Shown: piece by piece, positions 1,614 to 37,220 of the stretch | Position numbering within the stretch: position 1 is the stretch's first letter | Layout of the letters: each line of letters begins with the position of its first letter | NCBI GenBank assembly: GCA_001179505.1 | Contig: CDMY01000395.1 | Span: forward strand, 310,001 to 374,000 | Direction of reading: 5' to 3' | From: Vitrella brassicaformis CCMP3155 | Lineage: Eukaryota > Protista > Chromerida | Length of the DNA stretch: 64,000 nt | Translations under genes and position numbers: made by a program | Notes under the pieces: model-generated | What the model was told of the DNA's origin: nothing | The model's database searches: none | Seen by the model: only the letters and a program-made list of their open reading frames with translations

Positions 1614-1740
1614 TAGTGTCATCCCTCCGGCCCAAGAGGCAAAGGAGCGAAGAGAATGTAGCATGGCGACGACGAGGGCAGAGCCCGTTGACGCCACAAA
1701 ACAGCACTCCGATCCATAGCTTTCGCGACTTGGCTGCACG

Positions 1741-3708
1741 ATGGCTGCCAGTGCCGCCGCCCAGGTGAGAAGAGGGAGCTGCAGGCCAGGCAAATCCCTA
1801 CATCATGACGTGAATCACTTGTGCTCTCTGTGTGTGGTTTGTCATTCGGTTTGGTGCAGATGAGCGCGGTGATACGGGCGCAGCTGCTGCCGCAGGTAGA
1901 GGGCTATCGGCTGAAGCAGGCTCAGGTATCAGCTAACCAACACATACCGACTCGTCCATTCCATGCAGTGCATCCAAAGCTCATCGGCTGCGTGCTTGTG
2001 TGTGGTGTGCAGGTCAACAGCTGCATCGACCAACTTCTGCAGATGGACACCGCGGCTTCGGTGGCACCACTGATGCGGCAGGCTGCCAAACACACCACAA
2101 GCCCTCTGTGTCATGCTGCTTTCGTCGTTTGATTCATTCGTCAGATGGTGGCCAAGGTGAGTCGTCAGTTTGCTGCCGTGTCCGACCTGCTGGCCGAGTT
2201 GGCAGAGACCATCAACTCGACCATCGCACTCACAAGACATCGCCGCACACAGGTGAGTGGGGGAGTGACCACAGGCAGGCACACACACAAGACCCACACT
2301 GATCTGGTGTGCACCTCTTATGTGCTGTGTGTGTGTATGTCCTTCTGTCTGTGTGTCATCAGGCGCGACGGTTGCACCTGACTGACATCCCTGCCGAGCC
2401 CATGAGCGTCATCATGGAACTTGCTGACCTCACCGCCGTCGCCCACCTCAAGTCGACAGCCCGGCCCATCAGAAATGCCTCCGGCCGATCGTCCGCTGCC
2501 TTCGGCTGCCGAAGGCCATCGAGCGGGCGGGGGCGGGCGGTGTGGTGCAGTTCGACCCTTTGCTGAGCCACGGCGATGTGATGAAGGCCATGTGGGTGGT
2601 GGAGGAGGGGGGCGAGGGCGGCTGGCGGGAGGTGAGCGACACACTCAGAGTCGCCGAGCATTTCGGCTATTGTCAGCTGCCGGTCACTGTGGGTGTTGGA
2701 TACCTCCAGACACACGCCACCAAGGCGGTAAGCGCGATACACAGAAGAGGCAATGGGCGAGCTGCTGGATGTGTGTGTGTTGACTGCAGGATTTCCTGGC
2801 GATGCCCCGGTTCTGTGAGCAGTGGATGCTCGTCGGCCGCAATGTGGCCCTCCGCCGCCCCACTGGCCAGCAAGACGGCACTCTCGAGCTGTTCCGCCAC
2901 AACAACAACGAGACTCGCGCCATCCGCAACGAGCCCAACTTCGCCATCGCCATCAACCCGCTCCTCCCCCTCCCTGGCCGCCCCGTCCATCCCTTCTCGC
3001 AGCACCCCTTCACCCACCACGCCAAGCCACACGACCCGCCAGTCCGCCACCGCATTGTGTGGGAGGATGGTGTGGGGTGGGCGACAGGTGGCGCCAACGA
3101 TGCGCCTGTTCTCACATCGGCGAGTTCCCTGCTGAAGGAGCTGATGCTGGTTCACCGGCTCGTGTTTGCTGTGGGCGGCTTCACCGAATCGCCAGCAGTG
3201 GTGGTGGACCGGTGAGTGGATGGACGGCATACAATGAGAGGGCGAATGGCTATGTGGTGCGCTATTGATGTGTGTGTCAGGCGTGTGCGGGGTGGCCACC
3301 TCGACCGCATCATGACTCGATCGCCGCACACGCCCCTCAACGGATGCTCGGACGTGGTGGCATGGGAGCGGGCCGATGAGGTCTGTGGGCAGACGCATCT
3401 GCTTACGTCATCCAACGACCCATTCATCGCATGGATTAACTATAGCATCCAACCAAACAACAACCAGAACGGTACGCATTCACATTGACAACACATCAAC
3501 AACCCATCATCATGCTGTCGTGTCGTCTGATCCTCTGCTCTGCTGTTGTGTGCGTGCAGTGCGCGTGATCATCACTACCACCGAGGCGCCAGCAGTGGGT
3601 GTGGCCAATGATGCGCCCTTCGCCCAGCGGTTCCCCCTGACGGCCGCTAAGGTGCGCCGCGTCCTCGGGCCCATCGCGGCCATCGTGCTCGACGGCCAGG
3701 CGCCTTAG
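1741..3708 (+). pseudogene. Dispersed 8-exon gene family copy 1 (N-terminal helical region + F-box-like segment + variable C-terminal domain), disrupted
   Basis: Exons MAASAAAQ / MSAVIRAQLL / VNSCIDQLL / MVAKVSRQF / ARRLHLTDIPAEP / DFLAMPRFC / GGHLDRIMTRSPHTP / ...LGPIAAIVLDGQAP* align with copies 2-4 including introns. Intron-3 donor is GT>AT at 2073 and there is a 1-bp deletion frameshift at ~2478 (aatgcctccgg vs aatgccctccgg). Confidence 0.85.
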
Positions 3709-4592
3709 ATACAGCGTTCCCACACAGATGATGCAGAGGATACCTGGTGGTACGGATTGTGTGAGTGTTGGGTCCGTGTTCTGCAGGCAAATTGGCGTCA
3801 AGGAACGCCACAGAAGTAGCTGACTGACTGTCTGACTGACTGACTGTCTGGCCGGCGGGTGGGAGGACGGGCTGCGCGTCTGGTGGTATGTGCATCTCAT
3901 ATCTGCTGCTGCATGATGGACTCATCCTGTACGTGTAGTGTGCGGACAGACAGACAGGTGCGGTGCGGTTCGGTTCGGGTCGGTGCGGGTCGGTGCGTGC
4001 GCAAATTCCGATGAATTATACATGTGTTTAATTACTAGAATGTGGTTCCCACATAGCATGGCATGGCACATCCCATCCCATCCATCACAAGTCGTCTTTC
4101 TGTCTGACAAACCAGGTCATAAACTAAATCCCCTGCCCCGTTCCTCTCCCCAACTACCACACACTACACCGTCCACTGTCGTAGTTGATGCAATAGACCC
4201 CTAAAAAAGGTGGGAGAGCTGAAGAGCTCGCAGAGGACAGCCGTGGTGCTCACTGTGAGTGAAGTAATGCGGGATAAATGTGGTGAATTGCTAGGACTAC
4301 ATCTATATTGACGTTTTTTGAGGTCCTTTTTTCCCGTTGTGACATGCGTGCGACATCGATTTAAGTGATGAGTCTTCGCATTCATATCTCTGTCAGACAG
4401 GGAAAGGCGACTCATCCATCATTCGCTCTCTCCTACAGCCAGCTCATCGGGCCCTTCCTTTAAGCCGTGCGGCCCTTCAATCCATCATCAGCCAGGCAGC
4501 CTGTACAGCACACGCCACCAGATGTGCATACATATCACTCTGCCGGTGTTATGTGGGGGGGCTCTTACCTTCATATGTTACCGGGTGTGTGT

Positions 4593-6589
4593 CTATGGCG
4601 CCTCGCCATAGAGCACGATGGCTGCGATCGGCCCGAACACGCGACGGGCTTTGGCGGCCGTCAGGGGGAACCGATGGGCGAAGGGGGCATCGTGAGGGAC
4701 ACCCGCTGCTGGTGCCTCGCCGGTACTGATGGTGACGTGCACTGCATGCACACAGCAGCACAGCGAATGAAAAACGACACGGCAGCATGAGCATGTGCTG
4801 TTAATGTGTGTGCGTACCGTTCTGGTTGTTGCCTGGGGGAATGTCGAAGGAAATCCACGCGATGAATGGGTCGGCAGCCGTTGTCAGCACATGCACTTGC
4901 CCACACTGGCCACTGACCGCCTCCCATGCCGCCACGTTCGAGCATCCGTTGAGGGGCGTGTGTGGCGATCGAGTCATGATGCGGTCGAAGTGGCCACGAC
5001 GCACACGACTGACACACACATCAATAGCGCACCACATAGCCATTCGCCCTCTAATTTGAGTGCCGTCCATCCACTCACCGGTCAACCACCACTGCTGGCG
5101 AGTAGGTGAAGCCGCCCACAGCCTCAAACCGGTATTGCAGCATCCGACGCTTCAACATGGAGCTCGCCGATGCGTCAACGGCCCCATACACGCCAATCGT
5201 CGCCCAGCCCACACCAGGCTGTCAGCAGAAGCGGCAGCGGACTGGCGGGTCGTGTGGCTTGGCGTGGTGGGTGAAGGGGTGCTGCGAGAAGGGATGGACG
5301 GGGCGGCCGGGGAGGGGGAGGGGCGGGTTGATGGTGATGGTGAAGCCGGGCTGATTGCGAATAGCGCGAGTCTCGTTGTTGTTGTGGCGGAACAGCTTTA
5401 GTGTGCCGTCTTGCTGTCCGGTGGGGCGGCGGAGGGCCACATTGCGGCCGACGAGCATCCACTGCACACAGAAACGGGGCAGTGCCAGGAAATCCTGCAG
5501 TCAACACACACATCCGGCAGCTCACCTATTGCCTCTTCTGTGTGTCGTGCTTACCGCCCTGGTGGCGTGTGTCTGCAGGTCTCCAGCACTCACAGTGACC
5601 GGCAGCTGGCAATTGCCGCAATGCTTGGCGACTCTGAGTGTGTCGCCCACCTCCCGCCAGCCGCCCTCGCCCCCCTCCCCCACCACCCACATGGCCTTCA
5701 TCACATCGCCGTGGCTCAGCTGATCGTCGAACTGCACCACACCGCCCGCCCCCGCCCGCTCGATGGCCGTCCGCAGCCGAAGGCGGCGGACGATCGGCCG
5801 GAGGGCATCTCTGATGGCTCGAGCTGTCGACTTGAGGTGGGCGATGGTGGTAAGGTCAGACAGTGCGATGACGATGCTCATGGGGTTGGCTGGGATGTCA
5901 GTCAGGTGCAACCGTCGCGCCTGATGACACACAGACAGAAGGACATGCACACAACACACGCATAAGCCATGCACACCACATCAGTGTGGGCCTTGTGTTT
6001 GTGCCTGCCTGTGGTCACTCCCCCACTGACCTGTGTGCGGCGATGTCTTGTGAGTGCGATGGTCGAGTTGACGGTCTCTGCCAACTCGGCCAGCAGGTCG
6101 GACACGGCAGCAAACTGACGACTCACCTTGGCCACCATCTGACGAATGACACAACACGACGAGAGCGACGCCAAGCAAAGTAGACTCCACAGACCCACAG
6201 AGGGCCTTGTGGTGTGTGGTGTGTGTGGCAGCCTGCGGCACCAGTGGTGCCACCGAAGCAGCGGTGTCCATCTGCAGAAGTTGGTCGATGTAGCTGTCGA
6301 CCTGCACACACACACACAAGCAAGCAGACGCTGAGCTTTGGATGCACTGCATGGAATGGACGAGTCGGTATGTGTGTTGGTTAGCTGATACCTGAGCCTG
6401 CTTCAGCCGATAGGCTTGAACCTGCGGCAGCGCGCCCGTATCACCGCGCTCATCTGCACCAAACCGAATGACAAACCACACACAGAGAGCACAAGTGATT
6501 CACGTCATGATGTAGGGATTTGCCTGGCCTGCAGCTCCCTCTCTGTCACAAAATAGCTCTGTCACCTGGGCGGCGGCACTGGCAGCCAT
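4593..6589 (-). pseudogene. Dispersed gene family copy 2, disrupted; convergent (tail-to-tail) with copy 1
   Basis: Same exon-intron structure. 4-bp deletion in exon 2 at ~6431 (gcgcgctgccg vs gcgcagctgctgccg) and TGG>TGA nonsense codon at 5222-5224 (CRFC* vs CRFCWQPG in copy 3). Confidence 0.85.
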
Positions 6590-6740
6590 CGTGCACCCAA
6601 GTCGCGAAAGCTATGAATCGGAGTGCTGTTTTGTGGCGTCAACGGGCCCTGAACGCCTCTGCCGTCGCTCTCTTCGCTCCTTTGCCTCTTCCCGATCGGA
6701 GAGCAACCTTCCAACGAGCAGTTTCACGGAATGCGGTCTT

Positions 6741-6749
6741 AGCTCGCAG
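6741..6749 (-). promoter_or_regulatory. CTGCGAGCT motif in the divergent promoter between family copy 2 and GCN2
   Basis: agctcgcag on the + strand, between the ATG at 6589 (-) and the ATG at 6891 (+). Confidence 0.45.
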
Positions 6750-6890
6750 ACTTCGCTCTTCGTCATCCTCCCGCCTTTTTCGGGCGTCACAGAGCCAAGC
6801 CAGTCCGCCAGCATAAGTGCCTGAGGTTTCTTTCATCAGCCAGCGTGTTTGGTGGATGTGAGTGAGCCGATGAGATAGTTGAGTCAATCA

Positions 6891-8417
6891 ATGAGTGAGG
6901 CGGATGAGGGCGGCTGGCTGGAAGTCAAGACCCGCCGCAACAAGAAGAAGCGAAACAAGACCAAGCAGGACAAGCACAGCCATGCGCACATCAAAGCCAG
7001 CCAGCGCGACGCATCCCTCTCTTACTCAGTCTCACCATCGGAGGGCGAGCACAAGCACAGGCAGCAGCGAGGCGGCAGGAGAGATAATGAGGAGCGCGAT
7101 GAAGACGACTCGGTGGAATGGGAATTCGACCTCAAGATCGAAGAGGAAGAGGAAGAGGAGCAGGAGAAAGGTAGGTGGCCGTGACAGTGCACGCAGATGT
7201 GTGTGTGTGTTGTATGGTCTTGCTTGTGTGTCTGTCGTGTGTGTGTGTGTGTGTGTGTGTGTGTCGCGTAGATCAAGAGCCTGTCATGACGCCGGCTCAG
7301 CTGAGGGAGTGCAGGCAGATCCAGCAGAACGAACTGGAGGCACTCAACTCTATAGTGAGTGAGGCAGATGGCAATCACACTGTCACCCACCACACTGTCA
7401 CTATCACTGTGCCCTTCTGCCTGCTGTGTGACTGCGTGTGTGTCAGTTTATGGACGATATCAAGCTGCAAGAAGCCGGGTGATGAGCTGAGTGAATGAAG
7501 CGCACAAGTGTCTGCAGCAGACGCACGCAATCTCTGTGTGTGTGTGGGTCCCCCCAGTCTCCTGGGTCGCCCAACGCATGACGATGAAGAGGACGACGAC
7601 CTCATCTGCTTCGAGGACGAATCCAACCCGCCCTCCATCCCGTCGGCGCCCTCCTCGCCCACTGACAGCACATCGCTCAACGTCAAGTACACCGTCAGAT
7701 GCCGCCCGCAGCACTCCAGCAGCATTGGGCGCAATGAGGAGGTCTTCGCCGACATCATTGTCACGTACACACCCAGGTACGTGATGGTGTGATGGATCGA
7801 TCATTGTACACGTGTGTGTGTGTGTGTGTGTGCAGCTACCCGTTGGTTGCTCCTCGGTTGGAAGTGGGTGCTGTGGGAGGCATCAGCAAGGAGGGGGAGG
7901 ACCAGCTCAAGAAGGCACTCGAACAGTGGATCAAGCACTGGTGAGTGCAGGCAAACACACCACATCCACATCTGTATGCCATGCGTCCATGTGTGTCTGT
8001 GAGATGCATATGCTATGCTGCATGCAGGCGTGGTCATGAGTGCATCTACGACATCACGCTGGGTGCGAGCGAGCTGCTCGACAAGTTCCAGGCACCCACC
8101 CCTGCACCCCTGTGGGACGAGGTGAGCACCCAGCCACAAGTGAACGCGGGTGTCCATTTCCATCTATCCATCCATCCATCCGTCATTTTGTGTGTGGTCG
8201 GCTGTGTGTGGTTGCGTGCAGATGCAGGCGCGTGTCGAGTTGAAGCAGCAACGGCGACAAGAGGAGCAAGAGGCGCAGCAGAAGGGGTACGCACACACAC
8301 CTGTCACACCCACCACCACTGTGTCTGTTGGTGACCCCGCCGTTCAGTGCGCAAGACGACGAGATCGAGATGCATGCCCTCAAAGGCCAGAAACTTGAAG
8401 AGGTCAGAGCTTCCACA

Positions 8418-8451
<34 letters not shown>

Positions 8452-16371: not shown

Positions 16372-17611
16372 TCACACCGTCGGCAGCAGCTTCTGCACCA
16401 AGAATAGCTCCATGCCCAGGTCGAAGAGCTTCGACTGACAGACACAACAACCATGGGACACAGCAGACACACACAAGGATGGACACAGGCACAGGTGTGT
16501 ATGGTATGGGTGGGCCCTTTGTGTGTGTGTCTCGCTCACTCACCAAAGGGTCGTCTTTCATATTAGAGCGCATGGCGAATTCGTTGAGGGACTTGCTCAG
16601 CCGGTCAGGCACCACCGTCCTGTCATCCTGCCCATCCACACAAGACACAGACGCACACACTCATCAGTGCAACACGTACAGAAAGGACCCCTGCTGACTT
16701 ACGCCCTTCATTTTGAGCACCGACGACACGGCCCCCGCCACGTTGTTGAGCCTGCCCTTCACAGGATCCGTCAGATCGACATCTCCATCACCGCCAAACA
16801 GCACATCCGCCGCGGCCATCAGCGGCTCGACATTCGTATCCTCCTCCTTCGCTTCCTCCATCTTGTCGGCATCAACATACTCACCAGTGAGCTTGCTCAT
16901 GACTTTCTCGGCCTCACTGAGTTTGTTCACGACTTTCTCGGCCTCGGCCTCACCGACGGCCCCCAGAGCGTCACGCAGCCGCCCCCGCAGCTCCTGCACG
17001 GACCCCGTGAGCGTCTCGTCGCCTTGCAGGATCTCCATGACCTCCTCGCCGAGCTCCATGAACGACACACCCGTAGCCTTGCTGAGGTCTGTGAGCAGCT
17101 TCCCCGCGTCACTGGCCAGCAGCTCGGCCTCTCTCAGCGGGGTGCCCCTGCCGGCCGTCCTGATGTGCCGCAGCCCCTCCTTGAACGCATCAAGGTCGCT
17201 GCCGAGGGAGGTGGTCCTTCCGCCCTGCTCGTCCAAGTCGAAAATGAAATCGATGATGTCGCCGTCGAGGAAGTCGTTGTCAAGCGCGTCGAGCAGCGGC
17301 AAATCCAAGAGGGAGCCGGGACCGTCCTTGTCGAGGAGAGACAGCCGGCCGGTCGCGTCGTCGTTCGCTGCGGGGGCGTTGTCATTGGCTGCAGGGGGCG
17401 GTGTGACGTTGGCTGCCTGGGTCAGCTCGTCGTCGGCTGCAGGGGCAGGCGTGACATCGCTGGCCTGGGCTGCTGCTTCTCCTTGCTGGTCAGGGCCGTG
17501 TGGGAGAATGCGTGACTCGAGGAAGGGAGAGGGGATGAGGAACTCGGAGGGCGCCATGTCTGCTCCACATGCCAGCAGCAAAGACGAGACAAGAGCCAGC
17601 ACCAGCATCAT
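16372..17611 (-). CDS. Secreted acidic hypothetical protein (3 exons)
   Basis: Signal peptide MMLVLALVSSLLLACGA, Ala/Pro/Asp repeats, helical C-terminal half; spliced end ...KG/DDRTVVPDR...DPL/SKLFDLGMELFLVQKLLPTV*. Confidence 0.75.
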
Positions 17612-17780
17612 GGCGTTCAGAGGAGAAGAGAAGGAAGCGCACAGAGAAGGAGGAGATAATGAAATACGACGAACAGAAACGGCCTTTTGCTGTACGCGAG
17701 GTAAACTTCGCTCAACGGTCATGTCCTGGCCAAGGCTAGGATGATGTCTTTTCTCATGCGCATGAATCAAGAAAGTGTCA

Positions 17781-18459
17781 TCATCCGTTCTCTGTGAGGT
17801 GTCGGCCAGGCAGCAAGACGCTCCCACGGGTCTGCTGCAGCTCAAGAAGGGCCAGCACAAGCGGCACGGCGGCGCCCACCGCCATGGCCATGGCAGCAAC
17901 AGGCAGCAACAGGAGGCCAACGAGAGGGCACCTGCACTGGGTGTGGACCAGTTCGACGCCATTCTGATCTCTGCCATTCTGCTCTCTGCCACGCGGGCGA
18001 GTAGCTATGACAGAACCTGCAGAGGGCGGCCCCATATGACGATACCCTCCACACCTCTGGAATTTGGTCGACTTTGTTGAGCACGACCACCATGGGCTGG
18101 CACTCCTGCGTCTATGTCTGCACCCCCTTGGTCGCGTCAATCACCAGCAGCACCGAATCGATGATGCGCGCCCCCCCGATAATGGTCTTGATCAACGAGG
18201 CATGGCCAGGACAGTCCACCAAGCAGAACTGCAGCTCCCTCTCCCTCTCCCTCTCATCAGCAGCCTCATCAGCACCCAGATTGGTCTTGACAAAGAAGGC
18301 AGAGAAGCCGAGGTCAATGGTGATACCGCGTTCCTGCGACTGGGGGTGTTTGTCGAGGGCTGCCGTGGACGTCATGCGGCTGAGCGCCCGCACGAGGCTG
18401 GTCTTGCCGCTGTCGACGTGACCTAGCACACCCACGTTGACGTTCAGCCGACGAGCCAT
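17781..18459 (-). pseudogene. EEFSEC: Truncated selenocysteine-specific elongation factor (eEFSec/SelB) G-domain with in-frame TAG
   Basis: NVNVGVLGHVDSGKTSL, LDKHPQSQERGITIDLGFS, LVDCPGHASLIKTIIGGARIID are eEFSec-type. Reads KGVQT*TQECQPMVVVLNKVD with TAG at 18112-18114, about 8 codons are missing after EC, and no domains II-IV are seen before the next gene. Confidence 0.8.
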
Positions 18460-18817
18460 CGGGACGGAACCGTGCAGATCTGTCGACACACACATGCACA
18501 TGCATATGCATATCGATGACCGTCGACGTCAAGGTGTCCGTAGAAGATCTGACCTCGGTGTCGGGCGCTCCTTGTCAGATGAAAACCTGCAGATCAGATG
18601 GATAACAGGAGGACACATCAACATGTGAAGTCTGTTGCACATCCGTGCCATCATCATACATACGCACCTGACCGGTGGTCTCCACGGCACACAGGTGCAC
18701 GGCAGATCCGCGCTGCACTTTGCCGATCTCTTCACGTTGATCAATGCCCTTGCCGCCTCCCTGCCGCAATCTGGCAGATGAGATCCGCCATCCCTCGGCT
18801 CCCAACAACTCCCCAGA

Positions 18818-18838
18818 CTGCGAGCTCAGCTGCGAGCT
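18818..18838 (+). promoter_or_regulatory. Tandem CTGCGAGCT x2 in the divergent promoter between eEFSec and family copy 3
   Basis: ctgcgagctcagctgcgagct read directly. Confidence 0.45.
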
Positions 18839-18958
18839 TTTGAGCTCTCTTTCCACACACACGAAGAGAATGTAGCATGGCGACAGCAGAGGTGTGCAGA
18901 TCCTGTTGAAGCCACAAAACAGCACTCCGATTCATAGCTTTCGCGACTTGGCTGCACG

Positions 18959-20944
18959 ATGGCTGCCAGTGTCGCCGCCCAGGTGAGAAGAGGGAGCTGC
19001 AGGCCAGGCAAATCCCTACATCATGACGTGAATCACTTGTGCTGTCTGTGTGGTTTGTCATTCGGTTTGGTGCAGATGAGCGCGGTGATACGGGCGCAGC
19101 TGCTGCCCCGGGTGGAAGGCTATCGGCTGAAGCAGGCTCAGGTATCAGCTGACCAACACACATACCGACTCGTCCATTCCATGCAGCGCATCCAAAGCTC
19201 ATCGGCTGCTTGCTTGTGTGTGTGGTGTGCAGGTCAACAGCTGCATCGACCAACTTCTGCAGATGGACACCGCGGCTTCGATGGCACCACTGGTGCGGCA
19301 GGCTGCCAAACACACCACACACCACAAGGCCCTCTGTGTGTCTGTCGAGTCTACTTTGCTTGGCGTCGCTCTCGTCGTGTTGTGTCATTCGTCAGATGGT
19401 GGCCAAGGTGAGTCGTCAATTTGCTGCCGTGTCGAACCTGCTGGCCGAGTTGGCAGAGACCATCAACTCGACCATCGCACTCACAAGACATCGCCGCACA
19501 CAGGTGAGTGGGGGAGCGACCACAGGCAGGCACAAACACAAGGCCCACACTGATGTGGTGTGCACCTCTTATGTGCTGTGTGTGTGTATGTCCTTCTGTC
19601 TGTGTGTCATCAGGCGCGACGGTGGCACCTGACTGACATCCCTGCCGAGCCCATGAGCGTCATCCTGGAACTGTCTGACCTCACCACCATCGGCCGATTC
19701 AAATCGACAGCCCGCCACTTCACCAACGCCGTGCGGCCGATCGTCCGCCGGCTTCGGCTGCCGAAGGCCATCGAGCGGGCGGGGGTTAGTGGTGTGGTGC
19801 AGTTCGACGATCAGCTGAGCCACGGCGAAGTGATGAAGGCCATGTGGGTGGTGGAGGAGGGGGGCGAGGGCGGCTGGGGGGAGGTGGCCGACACACTCAG
19901 AGTCGCCGAGCATTCGGGCTATTGCCAGCTGCTGGTCATTGTTGGTGCTGGAGCTCTGCAGACACACGCCACCAAGGCGGTAAGCACGACACACAGAAGA
20001 GGCAATCGGTGAGCTGCTGGATGTGTGTGTGTTGGCTGCAGGATTTCTTGGCGCTGCCCCGTTTCTTTGCGCAGTGGATGCTGGTCGGCCGCCGTGTGCC
20101 CTTCCGCCGCCCCACTGGCCAGCATGACGGCACACTCGAGCTGTTCCGCCACAACAACAACGAGATCCGCGCCATCCGCAACGAGCCCAACTTTACTATC
20201 ACACTCAACCCGCCCCTCCCCCTCCCCGGCCGCCCCGTCCATCCCTTCTCGCAGCACCCCTTCACCCACCACGCCAAGCCACACGACCCGCCAGTCCGCT
20301 GCCGCTTCTGCTGGCAGCCTGGTGTGGGCTGGATTTCGATTGGCGTGTATGGGGCCGTTGACGCATTGGCGAGCTCCATGTTGAAGCGTCGGATGCTGCA
20401 ATACCGGTTTGAGGCTGTGGGCGGCTTCACCGACTCGCCAACAGTGGTGGTGGACCGGTGAGAGGATGGACGGCCACACAATGAGAGGGCGAATGGCTAT
20501 TTGGTGCGCTATTGATGTGTGTGTCAGGGGTGTGCGTGGCGGCCACCTTGACCGCATCATAACTCGATCGCCACACACGGCCCTTGACGAGTGCTCAGAC
20601 GTGACGGCATTTGAGGGGGCCAGTGGGCGGTGTGGGTAGGTGCATGTTCTGACGTCATCCAACGACCCAGTCATCGCAGAGATTTTCTTCGTCATTGCCC
20701 TAGGCAACAACCAGGACGGTACGTATACACATTCACAGCATATGTTCATGCTTTCGTCTCGTCTGATCATCTGCTATGCTGTTGTCTGCATGCAGTGCGC
20801 ATCTTCATCGCTACCAGCGAGGTGCGAGCAGCGGGTGTCCCTCATGACGCCCCCTTCGCCCAACGATTCCCCCTGACGGCCGCCAAAGCCCGTCGCGTCC
20901 TCGGGCCCATCGCGGCCATCGTGCTTGACGGCCAGGCGCCATGA
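18959..20944 (+). pseudogene. Dispersed gene family copy 3, disrupted by one nonsense codon
   Basis: All 8 exons are otherwise in frame; CAG>TAG at 20637-20639 (SGRCG*VHVL vs SGQCGQVHVL and SGWCGQEHVL in copies 2 and 4). Confidence 0.85.
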
Positions 20945-22296
20945 TCATGAAGGTGAGAGCCACCCAGATGATGCAGACATGCATATAATGGTGTGCCTCC
21001 TGTGTGTTGGTTTCTGTCATGCAGGATGGTCGTTTGGCTCGAAGGATGACCCGCTTGACTGGGCGGCTGACTGGCTGGCGGGCTGTTAGTGGGATGGTGT
21101 GTGTGCAAGTTGGCTGCATGTGGTGCGTCCGGCCGAATGGGATGGACTCATCCGTGGAGTGGACGCGTGTGTGTGCAGACAGACAGACAGACAGACGGAC
21201 AGACAGGTGCATGTGAGTGAAATCCATCCGTGACAGAGATGGAAGGCATAGGAATGCACGAACCATTCATTGTGGCTCAATAATATTGCACTCTGCCAGA
21301 GTCAGCTCGGCCGCTCAGCTCGCTCAAGTCAGCTCAACCACAGTGGCCATTCGCACTCGGCTCGCGCCCCGCTGATTGGCATGGCAGCCATGGCTACTGC
21401 TTTGTGTCCTCCCGTGTATGGTCTTTTTTGGCGACCGTGTGAATCATAGGTGTTTTGCTCGCGTCCGGGGTCGTCAGCCTGTGTCTCAGCGGGTGGGCGA
21501 AATGCGTTTGTTGGCGTGTGTGTCTCAGCGGGTGAGTGGTAGGCAATACAACTCTGTGTTCACAGGACATCATACACAGCCTGCTGCCCATGTGTGTCCA
21601 ACGGCTTGAAAGACCAACACTCAGCCGCCAAGGCGGTAAAAATCAGCTGAACCAATTGACCACTTGCTTGAGCCGAGCATCGTGCTCCTTAAAGCATTCC
21701 ATTCCACCCATACACCAGGGGATGCCATGGCTATTCCCGCATCCTCGGCGCAATACATAAACACGTCTCACTCCCTCCCCTATGTCTCTCTGCAAAAATG
21801 TCTCTGAGAGATGGAGCTGAAAAAGAAATGACCGCATTCATGTGCGGGGAGCTTCCGGCAAGGCAAGGCATGGATTGGATGGATATGGACATAAAGAACG
21901 GGTAGTACAAATAAGTACATAAACCACAAATCCAGACTGAGGGCCGAACACACAACACAACACGAAAGTATGGAAGCCGCGAAGGCGATGTGAAGTAGAG
22001 ACACGCAAGAGAAAAGTACGTCGCGCACAGACGGCAGGCCCACTGTCATCACTTTGACGCCTGCACGCTGGCCTCTATCGAATTGCATACCTCGCGAGCA
22101 GCTCAACAGCTACGCAGGCAGGCGCCCCCCCTCTCGCTCTCTACCCCCCTCTCTTCTCTCAGAGTGGCCCCGCCCCGAGGATCAAAGGGATCTTCAGCCC
22201 CTCTGGCACGACCTCAGACTCCCTAGTAGACACACATACACACACAGAATCATACACTCACTCACAGTGCTGGCTGTGTCGGTGTGGGTCTCGCGT

Positions 22297-24827: not shown

Positions 24828-25306
24828 GACATTGACGGTGAGTGAGGGGCCGAAAAGGGGCGGGGATGGCAGATGTGTACGGGATCGACGCTCCTCAAGA
24901 GTTTACCTTTGGCCAAGATTTTGCTGAGTTGTCCCGGCGTAGCGAAAAGAATTAAGACAATAGGGGGTGCGCGAAGCGTCAAGACTGGAATAATGTGTTG
25001 CGCGTTCAGTGCGTTCATCACCATGGCCATAAAAGCCCGACACGGAGAAAGGACGTGTGTTGTCACTGCAAGAGCCAAAACGGTGCAGTACACACTCCCC
25101 CCACTCCCTCCTTCCTTCCCCCTTGATCACAATGACTGACTACCCCCATTTCATTCAAAAAGCCTTCCTTATTCCACACAAAAACAACACAGGGACCAAG
25201 ACACTTACATGAATCAGAGATGCAAACGAGACCAGGACATAAACCGCCAACTAGAAAAGGCAGGCCGACGGACGTCCCATTGTATGTCTGTCAGACTCTG
25301 TCTGCA

Positions 25307-27217: not shown

Positions 27218-27254
<37 letters not shown>

Positions 27255-28010: not shown

Positions 28011-28095
28011 TGCGAAGGCACAATCTTGGAGATGAGAAGAAGGAGCAGCGTTTCCAGGCGGAACAGGCAGCGGTTTCAGGGAGCGCCCAGGCCGT

Positions 28096-28104
28096 CTGCG
28101 AGCT
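28096..28104 (+). promoter_or_regulatory. CTGCGAGCT motif ~90 bp upstream of the amidohydrolase ATG, with no family copy nearby
   Basis: ctgcgagctaagct read directly. Confidence 0.4.
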
Positions 28105-28267
28105 AAGCTAGAGTGAAAGTGATTCATCAATTCACAGCATGCAATGCACACACGCGCCACACACGTACGTCCCATGACGTAACATGACAAAATCTCAAAA
28201 TCCCACCCCCTGCCCCGTGCAAATGAGCCCCATCCACTCATCTGATCTCCATCCATCTCCATCCTTG

Positions 28268-29560: not shown

Positions 29561-31097
29561 ACTTGGTGGTTCGAAAAGCCGTTCAGATGTGTCACCTTTT
29601 AAGCTCGCAATGACGATCCCGCGCCGCTCGTTCGTTCGTTCGTTAACCTCACGGGGACCTTGCCCCCCGGCCCCCCGAAGGGATACGCAAGAACGAGTCT
29701 GTGTGATGCAGTCCTGTCCACCCACCCACCCACCCCTATGGTCCACCACAAAATGAAACCTGCATAGGGATGGGCACAAAATGGCACTGGCACCGGCCGA
29801 CATGCAGATGACAACAAAGGGCACAGGTGACGAACACTTCCCCTGGCTACATACACAAGAACGAGCGATATCGCCCGACAGCATGAAGCCCTGGCAAGTG
29901 TACAGAAGCCAGAGGAAGGAAGCGAAACATGGAAGCCCACTGAGCCATCAAACGCAATTACCAACAATCAGGTGAACACACCACCATGTACACGCGAGAC
30001 CCATGTGCAAGGAAGGCAGGAAGACAACAGAAGGAGAGAAAGAAGGATGACCAAACAGGCCATAACACCCTACAACATGCAGACCGACGATGCCTAAGGT
30101 GCATTCCTACCCTCCTACCTTGGTCGCTGTGGTGAGCTCGCTAGAAAGGCTCTGTCAGAAGCCCAATCTGCTTATACATCCGCACACTCAGGTCAATAGG
30201 CAGCTAACAGCCACACATAGAGGGAGGCCTGACTGGACTTAGATAGAAAGATAGATGGCAGACAGAGGAAGCCCCGCCTCATCGATAGACATCCAGATAG
30301 ACATGAGGCCCTGACATGCAATGACATACTTGTGGACTCACTGGCAAGGCGACGGTCTATAAAGAAAACGCCGCCCTTTGGCGCGGGCGATATGCCACTT
30401 GGGATGGATACCAGGCAGAGAGACCACACGAATGACATCCATGGCCAGTTGCTTCACACCACCACTCGTAGACATACGAAAGGCAGGTAGAAGTCAGGGG
30501 AAGCAAGGTAGACAACAGATAAAGGCCAGAAGGGTCTCATACGAGATAGATACAGCCCGTACGTAGACGACATAGCATAAAAAACGGTTGACACATGCAC
30601 CAAAGCATACGCCCTCGAATCCCCGCAGAAACACCATTGCAGCATCACCAGGGCGGTTGCACCGGTTCAGCACACTCTGACGAAGGGGGACGAGGGGGAA
30701 AGCGCGTGTCCCAAAGGCAGGAAGGCTGATGACGCTGACGGCGACTCCATCCAGCAGATGCAGGAGCAGTTCTCGTCACGTTGGTCAGTTGAGAGAAGGC
30801 GCCAGCATGCGGATCTTCAGCCGAAGACCAGGAAGCGGCACGAGAGGAAATGGGAGGGCGTGCCGAGAGAGGGGAGGGACGCCATGAGATGAGTATGATA
30901 CGCTGACTGATGAGATAGCTGCCGAGACGGACGGCACAATGGGGGGAGGTCAGAAAGCTGACCACCACCAGATGGGCACAGCCGAAGACCGGACAAAGAT
31001 CAACGTGACCCTCAGAGGGAGGAGAGGCCGATGGCAGCCTCAGCCAAAAAGAAACGAGGCTGAGGATGCGGAAAAATGAGCAGGAAGCCAATTGGGA

Positions 31098-31106
31098 CTG
31101 CGAGCT
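31098..31106 (+). promoter_or_regulatory. CTGCGAGCT motif upstream of the OPR/HPR gene
   Basis: Exact motif ~165 bp before the ATG at 31269. Confidence 0.4.
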
Positions 31107-31268
31107 GGGCGGCTCGGAGTCGGAGATCTGCAGCTTTGAGGCCAGCTGGCGTTGAGGCAAGAGAATCGTTGAAGATCTTGGCATCACTCAACTGACGAAA
31201 CAGCCGCCCTGATTCGATTCGTGCTTTTTCCTGATGGATTCGGAGCGGCCTGCAGGATACGGACATAT

Positions 31269-34200
31269 ATGACCATCCTGCCATTATGCCTCCAGCTGCT
31301 ATTGATCACGTGCCAAATCAGCACCGCCTTCATCTATCCATCGCGGCCCCTCAAGCGGACACTGGCAGCCCCTCTACACAGCCATGCGGTCGTGCAGCGC
31401 ACTCTGCGGCAGCCCTCTCGACACACATCGCCTCCGCCAACAGACAGGGACAGCCGTCATCTCGTCACCAACCAGCGAATCGACGATGCTCAGACAACCG
31501 GGGAAATCATCCAAATCGTCCAGCAAGAAGGCGGTCCGTCACCTCTGCGGACGCCACTACTCGTGAGGGCCCTCCAACGAGCGGCCTGTCTGGAAGGCAG
31601 CATGAATGGAGTGTCGTGTTTGGTCCGCGAGGCTGTCGAGCGGGCGACAAATGGGGCCTTTTTGCCTTCACAAGTCGCCAAGCTCATGTGGGTGATTGCG
31701 CGATGGTGCCGACACAACGACGCGGGGGAGGAGCTTTGGAGCGCGTTGCTGACGTTCATGGATTTGGGTGACGGCAACTGGCGGGGGAAGGATTTGACTC
31801 TCGCGCTGTACAGTCTGGCGAAGAGGCGAGAGGGCGACTTTGAGCTGATATCGATGCTGCAGGATCGGCTGATGGACAGCCAGCTGACCGGGAGGGACGT
31901 GCCGATGGTCATGTGGTCACTCGGTACACTGCAGCGGCAGTTCTCGTCTTCTGTGGGCATCTTGCCCTCTCTAGTGGAGATCCTTCTCGCTTCCGCCTGC
32001 CGTCGCGTCAACGACATGACCACACAGGGCGTTGGCAACTGCCTGTGGGCATCAGCTGAGCTGCTCGCGGACCCTTCTCGCCCTCCCCCCGCCCTCGTTG
32101 CCTTCATGCAGCTGGCGGTGGAGCGCCTGAGTGCGGAAGAGGCCCTTAAGGACGGGGACATTGTGCAAGCTCTGTGGTCGACCGCGAGGATGCTCTATAT
32201 TATGATGGGAGAGGGCAATGAAGGTTTATCTGCTGTGCATAAGGCGCTGAATGGACTGGTTGAGAAGTGGAGTGGGCGGCTGGTGGGTCGGCTCAGGGCG
32301 GGGAAGATCCACAAGGAGGCCTACCTCGTGCAGCTGCTCATGTTTTGCGCTATCCGACGTACGCACGCACCATGGCACGGCACCACACAGAACCGGCATA
32401 GTGCAGTGAGTGCATGATTGTGTCATCGTCTGTCTGTCCTGTGTTTGTCTGATCAGGTCTGAACGCGGAACATGACCCCCTTCCGCGGGCGTTGGTCAAT
32501 CGCCTTGTGGACCCACGCCCATTGGCTCCTTTCGGTTCCTTCAAGGATGACAGCATGAGATACACACTGGCTGCGATGGCCCAGATGAACGTGTCGCGAC
32601 CTGAGGCCATCAATGCAACTGTACAGGTGAGATGAGATGAGATGCGGCGGCAGATAGACAGACAGACAGATCGATCACGAGAACAGATGGAGAAAAGGAA
32701 AGACTCATTTGCCTGTCTTGATGCATCCCTTCAGGTGCTGTCTTCGTCGCTGTCCACTCTGTCTCCGCGCACCCTCGCCCTTTGCCCATGGGCCCTGGCC
32801 ACACTCGCCGGCAACATGACACCACCCTCAGCACACGTGAACGACGGCATCGACGCGCTCATGCAAGACATCTCTCAGCGGATCCTTTCCAGTGTGGATG
32901 AGATGAACGAGGTGATGGTTGGCTCGCCGCGGCTGCTGTTTCTGTGCGCATGGGGGCTGGCCAAGAGGGGAGCGATGGATGCAGCGACACGAGAGCTGAT
33001 GGCGGGGTGGGGGCGAAGGGCCTGGAGGAGATTCAACCAAGAGGTGCGCCACTGGGATGCTGCCATCCAGCAATTTAATGGATCGACAGGGCTTGTGTAT
33101 GTCTGTCTGTTGTGTCTACGCAGGAGCTGTCGACATTCGTTTGGGCGCTCGCAAAAGGGAAGGGGAACGGCGGATCGCCTAATGTGGATGCGTTGATGCA
33201 TGAGGTCACGCAGACGATATATAAACGATATGGACCACTCTTTCTTCTGTGTGACCACTTATGTCTGTCATTGCGCATCTGCAGGTGTGTGCCGAGCTTC
33301 CCCTTGTCCTTCCACACATGACGGCCCGGTCCATTGCGAAGCTTCTGTGGTCGCTCTCCCGGCTGGACGCCCTCCACCCCCCGCCCCTCCTCGGCGCCTT
33401 CACATCCATTCTCCACCCCTCCCTCCCCACCCTCTCCCCACACACACTCGCCGCCATTGTCTCGTCCATCGGCTTCATGCTCAACCACAGAGGACGGCAG
33501 ACCGAGCAAAACAGAGACGCGGTGCGGGCCTTCCTCAGGGACGTCCTCGCTGAGTGTCTGCACCGGCCCGCCGCGTTTTCCAGCCGCGAGTTGGCGACGG
33601 TTGGGTGGGGGATGGTCACTTGTGGGTATGGGATCAGGGAGGGGTGGGAGGCTTATCTGTGGGCGGCTCGTCAGCGGATCGAGGATCGACGACAGCGCAT
33701 GGATGCAGGAGTGAGTAGTCGGGGACAGACAGACACACAAGGGAGGGCGGGTGGATGGACAGCAATTGAAATTGATGCTCATGGGCTTTCTTTGTTGTGC
33801 TGCTGCCCGCCCTTTCAGAGTTGTTCAGTGGTTGCCTGGGTCTTGGCGCGATCGAGTCACCACCACTTCACTGCCGATGCCGCCATGCAACAAGACATCA
33901 GGAGCTGTCGTGAGAGGCTGGTGGAGCGCCTCGAGAGCGAGACCGATGATTGGTTCGCGAGCCTCGGGCCCAGCGACGTCAGCGTGCTCACTGCCAGCAT
34001 CTTGACAGACGACATACCGATCCCGCCGTCCACCATCTCTCGTCTGGTCCGCCAAGCGAGCCGCCATCTGCCGGTGACGCCCTCCCCGCTACTGTGCCCA
34101 TCTCTGCTGGCCCTCTGCTCCCTCGCCCAGGCAGACGAGCCCACCCTGCCGCCCGCCATCGCCGCAGAGCTGAAAGGCTTCACTCGCGACGCTGCCGCTC

Positions 34201-34502
34201 GGCTGCTGGCCGATCACGGCTTGCGTCCGCCGTCTGTGGATGAGAGGACTCTTGCCGATCGCATTGCGGCCATCGCTGACCGATGGATGCCGTGCTTGTT
34301 GCTGGCGTCTGCCTGCCTGGCGGAGAGTGGCTGGGGGGGCGAGAAGGACGAGAGGTGTGTGGTGCTGGTGGGCGAGAGGGTGCTGAGGATGCTCGTGAGT
34401 GGAGAGACCAGGGTGACGCGACAAGACCTGGCCGCCATACGGCTCGCGGCACAGCTGCTGGGCAGGGGGCAGAGTGTGCAGGAAGAAGAGCACACGACTT
34501 GA
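31269..34502 (+). CDS. Helical-repeat RNA-binding protein (octotrico/heptatricopeptide repeat, FASTK-like), predicted plastid-targeted
   Basis: Repeated units LTGRDVPMVMWSLGTL, MTTQGVGNCLWASAEL, LSPRTLALCPWALATL, MSTQELSTFVWALAK, MTARSIAKLLWSLSRL, FSSRELATVGWGM; leader MTILPLCLQLLLITCQISTA-FIYP followed by an R/S-rich stretch. Confidence 0.8.
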
Positions 34503-35087
34503 TGGTGGGTGAGGAACTTGTTCGTTGCGGTGCCCTCAAGGGTTGGCATGGTGTGTGCAGAGAGAGAGGAGAAACATGGAGGGGTGATGCAGCTTCTCGC
34601 GTCGCACTGTCATTGGTCTGCGTGAGAGGCCGTGTGGCGGGCGCCAGATCGCCGCTCCCTCTCAACCGGACGATGCTGCACAAGAGACCCACGCCAGCAC
34701 TGATGGCTGCAATGTGTGTGCATGACGCAAATTGGCTTGCGCCATTGCTGGGTGGGTGCATCACGCTGTGGCTCGCCTCGTGTGTCGTGTGGCCCAGAAA
34801 CATTGAAAGGACGGTGTGATGAATGGGTGTGACATACAGGCAGAGACATGCGACCTCCCAAGTTGTCTTGTTTCCAATTCCATGGCGCAAGCAAGACTTC
34901 TCGAAGTTTCGTCCACCATGCGCACTCATTCGCACACACTACAGGCACCTCGTACAGCCCTTCTTTCAACACACGTGTAGCCTGCCAGCGCGCGCTTGCA
35001 CACGATCCATCCAACACATATAAGACACATAACTATATACGCGCCTCGTCACGCCATCATGATGTGTCTCGCTCTCACCTTCATGGT

Positions 35088-37090
35088 CTAATGCGCCTGA
35101 CCATCGAGCACGATGGCCGCGATAGGACCGAGGACGCGACGGGCTTTGGCGGCCGTCAGGGGGAACCACTGGGCGAAGGGGGCATCCTGAGGGACACCCG
35201 CTGCTGGCGCCTCGCTGGTGCGAATGATGACGTGCACTGCACGCAGACAACAGCAGAAGAGCGGATCAGACAAGACGACGGCATGATGATGTGCTGTGAA
35301 TGTGTATGAGTACCGTCCTGGTTGTTGCCTGGGTAAATGCCAAAGAGAATCCATGCGATGAACGGGTCGTTGGATGAAGTCAGCACATGCTCCTGCCCAC
35401 ACCACCCACTGGCCGCCTCGGCTGCCGTCACGTCTGAGCATCCGGCGAGGGGCGTGTGCGGCGATTGGGTCATGATGCGATCGAGGTGGCCACCCCGCAC
35501 ACGCCTGACAGACACATCAATAGCGCACCACATAGCGATTTGCCCTCTCATTGCATGCCGTCCATCCACTCACCGGTCAACCACCACTACTGGCGAGTGG
35601 GAGAAGCCGCCCACAGCCAACATCCGATGAGCCAGCATCAGGCCCTTCAGCAGGGAACTCGCCGATGCGTCAACGGGCCCGACGCCACCTGTCGCCCAGC
35701 CCACAACAGGCTGCCACGTAATGTGGTGGCGGACTGGCGGATCGTGCGGCTTGGCGTGGTGCGTGTAGGGGTTGCTGGGAGAAGGGATGGACGGGGCGGT
35801 TGGGGAGGGGGAGGGGCGGGTTGATGGTGATGGTGAAGCTGGGCTTGTTGCGGATGGCGCGAATCTCGTTGTTGTTGTGGCGGAACAGCTCGAGTGTGCC
35901 GTCTTGCTGGCCGGTGGGGCGGAGGAAGACGACACGGCGGCCGACGATCATCCACTGCGCACAGAAACGGGGCAACGCCAAGAAATCCTGCACCCAACAC
36001 ACACACATCCAGCAGCTCACCGATTGCCTCTTCTGTGTGTCGTGCTTACCGCCTTGGTGGCGTGTGTCTGCAGGTCCGTAGCACCCACAGTGACCGGCAG
36101 CTGGCAATAGCCGCACTGCTCGGCGACTCTGAGTGTGTCGCCCACCTCCCGCCAGCCGCCCTCGCCCCCCTCCTCTACCACCCACATGGCCTTCATCACA
36201 TCGCCGTGGCTCAGCTGATCGTCGAACTGCACCACACCGCCCACCCCCGCCCGCTCGATGGCCGCCTTCGGCAGTCGAAGGCGGCGGACGATCGGCCGGA
36301 GGGCATTTCTGATGGGTCGGGCTGTCGATTTGAGGTGGGCGACGGCGGTGAGGTCAGACAGTGCGATGACGATGCTCATGGGGTCGGGAGGGATGTCAGA
36401 GAGGTGCAGCCGTCGCGCCTGATGACACACACAAAAAAGGACATACACACATAGCACATGAGAGGTGCACACCACATCAGTGTGGGCCTTGTGTTTGTGC
36501 CTGCCTGTGGTCACTCCCCCACTCACCTGTGTGCGGCGATGTCTTGTGAGTGCGATGGTCGAGTTGATGGTCTCTGCCAACTCGGCCAGCAGGTCGGACA
36601 CAGCAGCAAACTGGCGACTCACCTTGGCCACCATCTGACGAATGAATCAACACGACGAGAGCAACGCCAAGCAAAGGAGACTCCACAGACACACAGAGGG
36701 CTCTGTGGTGTGTGGTGTGTTTGGCAGCCTGCCCCACCAGTGGTGCCATCGAAGCTGCGGTGTCCATCTGGAGAAGTTGGTCGATGCAGCTGTTGACCTG
36801 CACACCACACACACACACACACACACACACAAGCAAGCAGCCGATGAGCTTTGGGTGCACTGCATGGAATGGACGAGTCGGTATGTGTGTTGGTCAGCTG
36901 ATACCTGAGCCTGCTTCAGCCGATAGCCTTGTACCTGCGGCAGCAGCTGCGCCCGTATCACTGCGCTCATCTGCACCAAACCGAATGACAAACCACACAC
37001 AGACAGCACAAGTGATTCACGTCATGATGTAGGGATTTGCCTGGCCTCAGCTCCCTCTTCTCTCACCTGGGCGGCGGCACTGGCAGCCAT
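35088..37090 (-). pseudogene. Dispersed gene family copy 4, disrupted by a frameshift
   Basis: Exons 37067-37090, 36905-36970, 36738-36797, 36527-36634, 36050-36418, 35574-35987 and two more. +1 insertion at ~35772 (cagcaacccctacacg vs cagcaccccttcacc) shifts HPFSQHPFTHH to HPFSQQPLHAP. Confidence 0.85.
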
Positions 37091-37220
37091 CGTGCAGCCA
37101 AGCTATGGATCGGAGTGCTGTTTTGTGGCTTCAACGGGCTCTGCACCCCTCTGTCGTCGCCATGCTACATTCTCTTAGCTCCTTTACTCGCGCGATAAAC
37201 ATTGCGAGTCTCGGAGCTTA

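What the first reader, a model, noticed from the sequence alone, without database searches (positions are those of the whole stretch)
1634..37200. Intron-retaining gene family that appears to land at host promoters: four copies, all head-to-head with unrelated genes
Seen: four ~2.2 kb copies (1634-3960 +, 4500-6690 -, 18860-21210 +, 35000-37190 -) share exons, introns and a ~100-110 bp 5' leader (..aagagaatgtagcatggcgacg..gccacaaaacagcactccgat.catagc). Upstream of that leader homology stops and unique DNA begins, containing CTGCGAGCT on the same strand as the copy. Every copy is divergent from an unrelated gene (a hypothetical, GCN2, eEFSec, rlmN), with ATGs only ~180-500 bp apart. The same motif also sits at promoters with no copy (28096, 31098, 41769), so it looks host-derived. 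Inference: a DNA-level duplicating or non-autonomous mobile gene that preferentially integrates, or is only retained, on the antisense side of bidirectional promoters, borrowing host transcription. This is reminiscent of Tf1 promoter targeting, but introns are kept and no transposase, TIR, LTR or poly-A is visible.
Basis: partly seen in the sequence, partly recalled or inferred. Interest (0 to 1): 0.85.

Follow-up and report, generated by a model that had tools for sequence, protein, structure and literature searches.

The report
Vitrella orphan gene family, mostly pseudogenes
The four look-alike genes belong to a family of at least 41 intron-bearing copies, most of them broken, found only in the alga Vitrella brassicaformis; the copies spread by ordinary DNA segment duplication and copy-to-copy sequence exchange, not by a transposon that aims at promoters, although they do sit back-to-back with neighbouring genes unusually often.

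Summary
The window has four copies of about 2.1 kb that share exons, introns and a roughly 100-nt leader, each divergent from a neighbour with start codons 180-500 bp apart.

The genome is Vitrella brassicaformis CCMP3155 and holds at least 41 copies. The protein is a Vitrella-only orphan with no Pfam family and no solved structural relative.

All four window copies carry a frameshift or stop; only 6 of about 21 near-full-length copies look intact (dN/dS 0.57).

The promoter-landing mobile-gene reading is only partly supported:
- Copy 3 is one colinear 3.3-kb duplication of a locus on contig C473. It brought its promoter and a dead 5' piece of eEFSec with it, and has no target-site duplication or terminal repeats.
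- 5' and 3' homology limits vary between copies, and no transposase is present.
- Copies are mosaics, which shows gene conversion.
- CTGCGAGCT is a genome-wide word (2906 sites against 967 for the control). Earlier notes of this scan, on other DNA of this genome, call it a promoter element.
- In the family it is the outer half of an inverted motif pair that travels with the copies.

Back-to-back placement is the rule (about 28 of 30 callable copies), but 8-10 copies are uncallable and the local baseline is already about 65%, so an excess is suggestive only. No RNA data could be obtained.

The parts
1605..4160 (+). Copy 1. Distal promoter word at 1605-1613 and leader at 1640-1740. Exons at 1741-1764, 1860-1925, 2013-2081 (GC donor), 2145-2252, 2363-2727, 2790-3211, 3281-3471 and 3560-3708. 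The 3'UTR (subfamily A) runs to about 4160. It is a pseudogene: one base is missing near 2478-2480 in exon 5.
4592..6749 (-). Copy 2, tail-to-tail with copy 1. ATG at 6589-6591 and promoter word at 6741-6749. It is a pseudogene: a 4-nt deletion in exon 2 (about 6430) and an in-frame TGA at 5222-5224 in exon 6.
18046..21269 (+). Copy 3 as one segmental-duplication unit, colinear with C473:63550-66786 at 84.9% identity. It holds the dead eEFSec fragment, the promoter with two tandem words (18818, 18830), the gene (18862-20940, with an in-frame TAG at 20637-20639 in exon 7), the 3'UTR, and a piece of a partner copy's inverted 3'UTR.
18112..18459 (-). Truncated eEFSec-type G-domain fragment of 115 codons followed by TAG. 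About 10 residues are deleted after it and the rest of the gene is absent. The intact gene is at C473:63643-63981 and onward.
35087..37229 (-). Copy 4. ATG at about 37085-37087, promoter word at 37221-37229 and a proximal inverted half-site 23 nt before the leader. It is a pseudogene: a 1-nt insertion near 35771 in exon 6. The rlmN ATG lies 41 nt beyond the word, at 37270.
1044..1535 (-). First exon of the unnamed divergent neighbour of copy 1 (164 open codons, positive coding score, no Pfam family).
6892..7166 (+). First exon of the divergent neighbour of copy 2, a long plus-strand gene running to about 15.3 kb. Its N-terminus looks RWD/GCN2-like by eye; Pfam did not confirm this on the piece tested.
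37270..38919 (+). rlmN, the divergent neighbour of copy 4. It is a complete multi-exon gene with an RlmN_N domain and a radical-SAM cysteine motif.

Best explanation
These are members of a Vitrella-specific, fast-evolving orphan multigene family. The subfamily studied here has at least 41 loci, and the wider superfamily has 33 clusters at 50% identity. The protein has an N-terminal helical hairpin and a C-terminal alpha/beta domain of about 250 residues with no known relative.

The family grows by DNA-level segmental duplication of 2-5 kb pieces with variable end points: sometimes the gene alone, sometimes the gene with its promoter and part of the neighbour, sometimes a tail-to-tail gene pair. 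Copies are then partly homogenised by ectopic gene conversion, strongest in the 5' half, and most decay into pseudogenes (birth-and-death evolution).

Each well-preserved copy carries its own core promoter, an inverted pair of the genome-wide Vitrella promoter word: TGCGAGCT facing outward and GCTCGCAAT facing the gene. The apparent 'common 5' end' is therefore the outer edge of this promoter and of the zone kept similar by conversion, not a transposon terminus.

Shown: copy number, lesions, variable ends, the co-duplicated neighbour fragment, mosaicism, and the motif pair.
Inferred: the duplication mechanism (break repair or template switching rather than transposition), and that the word acts as the promoter here.
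For: - At least 41 copies at 74-87% identity with introns included, clustered on a few contigs.
- All ten relatives I looked up are Vitrella proteins.
- No Pfam family, no solved relative by sequence, and none by fold for a confident model (pTM 0.82; best Foldseek E = 0.035; best Z = 5.5).
- Census: 6 of about 21 near-full-length copies are intact, and the other roughly 15 have a few (typically 1-2) frameshifts, stops or insertions. dN/dS among the intact six is 0.57.
- Copy 3 is one colinear 3.3-kb match to the C473 locus, including 800 bp of the eEFSec side. eEFSec is intact at C473 and truncated and stopped in the window.
- Upstream sharing is nested at 800, about 380 and about 90-150 bp in one group, and extends at least 1.5 kb in a second group.
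- 3'UTRs form at least five subfamilies.
- There is no TSD or TIR at the junctions of copy 3.
- Mosaicism: the best partner of copy 3 is C473 at gene positions 301-700 (0.96-0.975), counting from the leader start, but copy 2 at positions 1351-1600 (0.947 against 0.795). Copies 1 and 2 share a 111-nt block that is 100% identical within about 85-91% surroundings.
- The copy 3/C473 flank is 82% identical while the 5' gene region is 91-97%.
- Inverted motif pair: the distal half is exact in 10 of 15 copies. The proximal half has at most 1 mismatch in 5 of 15, against 1.3% of control windows.
- The word occurs 2906 times genome-wide against 967 for the reversed control.
Against: - Fourteen of 20 leader-bearing copies have upstream flanks unlike any other copy, and their homology limits crowd within about 50 nt of the leader start. 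Purely random duplication end points would not predict this.
- Back-to-back placement with a neighbour whose ATG lies only 76-210 nt from the leader start is seen in at least 9 copies and is the commonest arrangement. This explanation accounts for it only in part, through inherited bidirectional promoters.
- No RNA evidence for expression or start sites could be obtained.
Confidence: 0.62

Rival explanations
1. Promoter-proximal capture or retention. Duplicated fragments are inserted preferentially at breaks in the nucleosome-free promoter regions of other genes, or survive only there, giving back-to-back pairs. A sharper version holds that junctions form by short homology at the shared, often palindromic promoter word, which would force the divergent orientation.
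For: - The upstream neighbour is divergent in about 28 copies and same-strand in 2, with 8-10 uncallable. This comes from a coding-strand test that was trained without the family and checked on held-out family exons.
- ATG-to-ATG gaps of about 180-310 nt occur in at least 9 copies.
- In several unrelated contexts homology ends 2-6 nt beyond the distal word.
- In copies 1 and 2 the word lies in DNA that does not align with other copies, and the pair sits exactly between two outward-facing words.
- The distance from the word to the neighbour's ATG is 27-142 nt, as earlier scan notes report for ordinary genes.
Against: - The local baseline for divergent neighbours is already about 65% (8 of 12 non-family genes in the window). 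If the uncallable copies are not divergent, the family rate is about 74% and not significant.
- Copy 3 inherited its arrangement by co-duplication.
- Breakpoints also fall inside the leader, in intron 1, and 90-810 nt upstream.
- Copies that lack the family spacer mostly lack the word, so the word usually travels with the copy.
Confidence: 0.22
2. A non-autonomous DNA transposon (Helitron-, MULE- or hAT-like gene carrier) with defined ends, moved by an enzyme encoded elsewhere.
For: Many dispersed copies of similar size, introns kept, and some regional clustering that could be read as local hopping.
Against: - No terminal inverted repeats, no target-site duplication, and no TC...CTRR ends or hairpin at the one unit whose ends are exactly known.
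- End points differ between copies.
- The long shared flank on C929 is a low-copy local duplication, not a repeat family.
- No transposase-like domain or fold in the encoded protein.
Confidence: 0.05
3. Retroposition of unspliced pre-mRNA: copies begin at the transcription start, keep their introns and end at the poly-A site.
For: Homology in many copies starts near the presumed transcription start, and 5'-truncated classes exist.
Against: - No poly-A tracts or target-site duplications.
- Promoter DNA and a neighbour-gene fragment are co-copied.
- 3' ends include pieces of the convergent partner's 3'UTR.
- All seven introns are kept in essentially every copy.
Confidence: 0.02

Closest known systems
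Lineage-specific multigene families evolving by birth-and-death with gene conversion (for example the expanded F-box families of nematodes and plants, or subtelomeric families of Plasmodium). This comparison is from general knowledge.
   Same: Dozens of paralogues confined to one lineage, regional clusters, many young pseudogenes, relaxed constraint (dN/dS 0.57), a more variable C-terminal half, and mosaic copies.
   Different: The protein has no recognised domain. An F-box is only a weak lead (protein-atlas score 0.83; no Pfam hit). Copies are interspersed singly among unrelated housekeeping genes rather than sitting in long tandem arrays, and they usually lie back-to-back with those genes at very short range.
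Segmental duplication by break repair or template switching (NAHR, or MMBIR/FoSTeS-type events). This comparison is from general knowledge.
   Same: Variable end points, co-duplicated fragments of neighbouring genes, inverted (tail-to-tail) pairs, blunt junctions without target-site duplication, and local clustering.
   Different: The units here are unusually small (2-5 kb) and numerous, and their 5' limits crowd around a core-promoter palindrome.
Tf1/Ty-type promoter targeting and gene-carrying DNA transposons (Pack-MULEs, Helitron captures).
   Same: Multi-copy DNA lying next to promoters, and host-gene-like content with introns.
   Different: No LTR, TIR, TSD, hairpin end, integrase, reverse transcriptase or transposase. 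The ends are not fixed. At least one copy arrived together with its own promoter and a piece of its old neighbour.

Membership tests
Cut-and-paste DNA transposon (autonomous or non-autonomous) | Terminal inverted repeats and a target-site duplication at fixed ends | tested here: not met
   The junctions of the copy 3 unit (18046 and 21269) show neither. Homology limits vary from copy to copy.
Cut-and-paste DNA transposon (autonomous or non-autonomous) | An encoded transposase, or relatives that encode one | tested here: not met
   No Pfam family on any exon or on ten full-length relatives, apart from one distant relative that carries a Cyclin_C domain. No solved relative by sequence or fold.
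Helitron | 5' TC and 3' CTRR ends with a subterminal hairpin, inserted between A and T | tested here: not met
   The ends of the copy 3 unit read CCTCC... and ...CATTCA and are flanked by ...ATAC and TTGT....
Retrocopy / LTR retroelement | Intron loss, a poly-A tail or LTRs, and reverse transcriptase or integrase | tested here: not met
   All seven coding introns are kept, with GT/GC-AG sites. No poly-A or LTR at the ends. No RT or integrase domain.
Multigene family under birth-and-death and concerted evolution | Intact and pseudogene paralogues coexist | tested here: met
   Six are intact and about 15 are lesioned among about 21 near-full-length copies. dN/dS is 0.57.
Multigene family under birth-and-death and concerted evolution | Duplicated segments of variable extent, with co-duplicated flanks | tested here: met
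   Copy 3 and C473 are colinear over 3.3 kb, including the eEFSec fragment. Nested flank sharing and a C929 flank of at least 1.5 kb.
Multigene family under birth-and-death and concerted evolution | Mosaic copies that show gene conversion | tested here: met
   The best partner switches along the gene. A 111-nt block is 100% identical between copies 1 and 2. No formal GENECONV-type test was run.
F-box protein family | A recognisable F-box motif (Pfam PF00646 or PF12937) | tested here: not met
   No hit at E up to 10 on exon 5, or at E up to 0.1 on whole proteins. There is only a sub-threshold protein-atlas feature hit of 0.83.

The most novel reading that the evidence does not exclude
New copies are seeded at other genes' promoters through the short, often palindromic core-promoter word that the family shares with a large share of Vitrella genes. 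A break or stalled fork at one such palindrome pairs with the family's own palindrome, and the gene is copied in. This would automatically place the copy back-to-back with the host gene, leave the host's promoter word at its normal distance from the host ATG, and explain why 5' homology so often ends a few bases beyond the word.
Probability: 0.12. Interest if true: 0.75.

Novelty: new member of a known kind. Interest (0 to 1): 0.36.

Why it matters
It removes an attractive but unsupported claim, a promoter-seeking mobile gene, and replaces it with a documented case of how a compact alveolate genome builds and erodes a private gene family: small segmental duplications that can drag promoter and neighbour fragments along, followed by gene conversion and decay. 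Three things are worth keeping:
- A confidently folded protein domain of about 250 residues with no known relative, expanded only in Vitrella.
- An independent sighting that the TGCGAGCT/AGCTCGCA word works as an inverted pair in a bidirectional promoter module.
- A still-open statistical question: whether duplicates in this genome settle preferentially on the far side of other genes' promoters.

Tried and rejected
Expression, splice sites (including the GC donor of intron 3) and start sites are untested.
- Annotated context: the look-up of encoding contigs leaves out this genome.
- First coding-strand model: it was dominated by the family itself and was discarded. I replaced it with a family-masked model, checked on held-out family exons.
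- Position-specific GC alone was too noisy to call strands.
- Whole-protein fold searches returned only coiled-coil look-alikes for the N-terminal hairpin, so the C-terminal domain was folded and searched alone.
- Literature searches found nothing on this family or on Vitrella promoters.
Exons were searched one by one by reference. Full-length work used the database protein P0002 (CEM33548.1). Exons were joined only inside scripts for the lesion census and dN/dS.
- Helitron, TIR transposon and retrocopy readings were considered and rejected (see the membership tests).
Full report
**What is there.** A repeat search and a four-way alignment confirm four copies: 1640-3710 (+), 4592-6684 (-), 18862-20940 (+) and 35087-37185 (-). 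They are alignable from a leader of about 100 nt through all exons and introns to just past the stop codon, with block identities of 80-100%. My gene model has eight coding exons of 24, 66, 69, 108, 366, about 416-422, 191 and 149 nt. Splice sites are GT-AG except for a GC donor after exon 3, which is conserved in most copies.

**Which genome, and how many copies.** The window is contig C395:310001-374000 of a 72.7-Mb assembly in 1064 contigs. Database relatives identify it as Vitrella brassicaformis CCMP3155. A whole-genome DNA search with copy 1 gave 49 matches, which chain into 41 loci at 74-87% identity with introns included. They concentrate on contigs C395, C473, C929, C410, C656, C170 and C279. 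A fifth C395 copy lies just past the window end.

**The protein.**
- No exon and none of ten full-length relatives matches a Pfam family, apart from one relative that also carries a cyclin domain.
- An exhaustive profile search with exon 6 found 33 clusters at 50% identity. All ten I looked up are unnamed Vitrella proteins.
- The annotated member P0002 (441 aa) folds into a long N-terminal helical hairpin, a poorly modelled helical stretch and a C-terminal alpha/beta domain.
- Folded alone, that C-terminal domain is confident (pLDDT 84.6, pTM 0.82). It has no solved relative: best Foldseek E = 0.035, best Z = 5.5, and nothing from the profile search against PDB sequences.
- An F-box/SPRY cluster was the only named look-alike in the protein atlas, at 0.83, which is below the level at which such hits mean anything.
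- There is thus no sign of a transposase, integrase or nuclease.

**State of the copies.**
- Copy 1 lacks one base in exon 5.
- Copy 2 has a 4-nt deletion in exon 2 and a TGA in exon 6.
- Copy 3 has a TAG in exon 7.
- Copy 4 has a 1-nt insertion in exon 6.
- Across about 21 near-full-length copies only six are intact, and the rest have a few (typically 1-2) lesions.
- The six intact copies give dN 0.147, dS 0.257 and dN/dS 0.57, fairly even along the gene.
- Introns are as conserved as exons or more so (for example introns 5 and 6 at 0.90 against exons 6 and 7 at 0.84 and 0.77). Identity falls from about 0.9-0.95 in the 5' third to about 0.8 in the 3' third.

**The ends are not fixed.**
- Piling up 20 leader-bearing copies shows that many share the leader from its first bases. 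A second class starts about 40 nt into the leader, a third class starts inside intron 1, and a fourth shares only exon 4 onward.
- Downstream of the stop there is a short, possibly intronic stretch and then at least five distinct 3'UTR subfamilies. Their shared lengths depend on which pair is compared.
- Fourteen of 20 upstream flanks are unique.
- One group shares nested lengths of flank: about 800 bp, about 380 bp and about 90-150 bp.
- A pair on C929 shares at least 1.5 kb. That long flank recurs only a few times, all on C929, so it is a local duplication and not a transposon.

Window 18046-21269 aligns in one colinear match of 3316 columns at 84.9% to C473:63550-66786.
- The shared piece includes the first 115 codons of an eEFSec-type GTPase (GTP_EFTU, E = 4e-22).
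- In the window this fragment ends in TAG, lacks about ten residues that follow in the intact gene, and has no further exons. The next gene's start lies only about 430 nt beyond the end of the duplicated unit (18046).
- At C473 the same reading frame is intact and continues into later domains.
- Copy 3 therefore arrived as a block holding part of its old neighbour, the promoter between them, the gene, its 3'UTR and a piece of the convergent partner's 3'UTR.
- Its junctions show no target-site duplication and no terminal repeat.

**Gene conversion.** The closest relative of each window copy changes along the gene. Counting from the leader start, copy 3 is nearest to C473 at positions 301-700 (0.96-0.975) but nearest to copy 2, 14 kb away, at positions 1351-1600 (0.947 against 0.795 to C473). 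Copies 1 and 2 share a 111-nt stretch of 100% identity inside about 85-91% surroundings. The copy 3/C473 flank (82%) and 3' region (77-82%) are much more diverged than the 5' gene region (91-97%). The 5' part thus appears to have been kept similar after duplication. The tree is star-like, with some grouping by contig.

**The motif.**
- CTGCGAGCT is over-represented in the window (9 against 0.93 expected) and in the genome (2906 against 967 for the reversed control).
- Earlier notes of this scan, from other windows of this genome, describe TGCGAGCT/AGCTCGCA as a promoter or start-site word that is often shared by back-to-back genes and sometimes palindromic. I did not verify those notes beyond the counts given here.
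- In the family the word is exact 32-45 nt before the leader in 10 of 15 copies.
- A second half-site in the opposite orientation (GCTCGCAAT) lies 16-23 nt before the leader. It has at most one mismatch in 5 of 15 copies, against 1.3% of control windows.
- Copies whose homology starts 40 nt into the leader mostly lack the word.
- The word is therefore usually part of the duplicated unit, a small bidirectional promoter module, rather than a host feature found at each landing site.
- In copies 1 and 2 the spacer does not align well. Their words could be the neighbours' own, because the pair sits exactly between two outward-facing words.

**Back-to-back placement.**
- With no annotation available, I trained a codon-usage strand test on family-masked DNA. 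It scored held-out family exons correctly: the sense frame scored 15-26 and every other frame at most about 8.
- Upstream of the copies the coding signal is divergent in about 24 cases, same-strand in 2 and unclear in 12.
- Direct ORF reading rescues four more, giving about 28 divergent, 2 same-strand and 8-10 uncallable.
- At least nine copies have a divergent ATG only 76-210 nt from the leader start.
- In the window, 8 of 12 non-family genes also have a divergent upstream neighbour, so the baseline is high.
- Against 65%, 28 of 30 would be significant (p about 4e-4, my calculation). If the uncallable copies are not divergent, 28 of 38 is not significant.
- Some cases are not independent, such as the copy 3 group.

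**Verdict.** The thing is a private, decaying multigene family spread by small segmental duplications and reshaped by gene conversion. It is not a defined mobile element, and it does not need to borrow promoters. Whether its duplicates settle preferentially beside other genes' promoters, possibly through the shared promoter word, remains a modest open possibility that the public annotation and RNA data could settle quickly.

**Limits.** There are no RNA data. Most flanks are only 1.5 kb.

Noticed in passing
window 1640-1740 (and the same leader in copies 2-4): The conserved leader holds a start-stop pair (ATG TAG) followed at once by a 10-codon upstream reading frame, kept in most copies. This may be translational control.
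   Followed up: no
window 2082-2144 (intron 3 of copy 1) and its equivalents: Intron 3 appears to use a GC donor (CAG|GC) in most close copies. The only nearby GT is not conserved. There are no RNA data to confirm the splice.
   Followed up: partly
window 4225-4233 (-): A further exact CTGCGAGCT lies in the 880-nt spacer between the convergent 3' ends of copies 1 and 2, in DNA unique to this locus. It could be a relic promoter or an unannotated short transcript.
   Followed up: no
window 21300-21335: About 40 nt beyond the right junction of the copy 3 unit lies a cluster of near-matches to the promoter word (AGCTCGGC, AGCTCGCT), so the block was inserted close to promoter-like DNA.
   Followed up: no
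G000:C395:374412-376476 (-), about 400 nt past the window end: A fifth copy on this contig. It is also lesioned (a frameshift in exon 6 and a damaged acceptor) and also lies back-to-back with a strongly coding plus-strand gene.
   Followed up: partly
L022 (G000:C170:171094-173567): This copy carries a 374-nt insertion in exon 6 that looks like a partial tandem duplication of exons 6-7.
   Followed up: no
L010 (G000:C929:115357-117468) upstream flank: The divergent neighbour opens with the same roughly 30 codons (MADL.CQIAAGR...) that lie upstream of eEFSec at C473 and in copy 3. Here, though, the frame stays open for 167 codons, so it is unclear which locus is ancestral.
   Followed up: no
window 48000-60000: G+C drops from about 0.59 to about 0.50-0.54 and coding signal is weak and mostly on the minus strand. 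The content was not examined.
   Followed up: no
window 16670-17620 (-): A strongly coding gene with a signal-peptide-like N-terminus (MMLVLALVSSLLLACGAD...) and an acidic, proline-rich low-complexity region. It is the true host neighbour on the 5' side of the copy 3 block.
   Followed up: no
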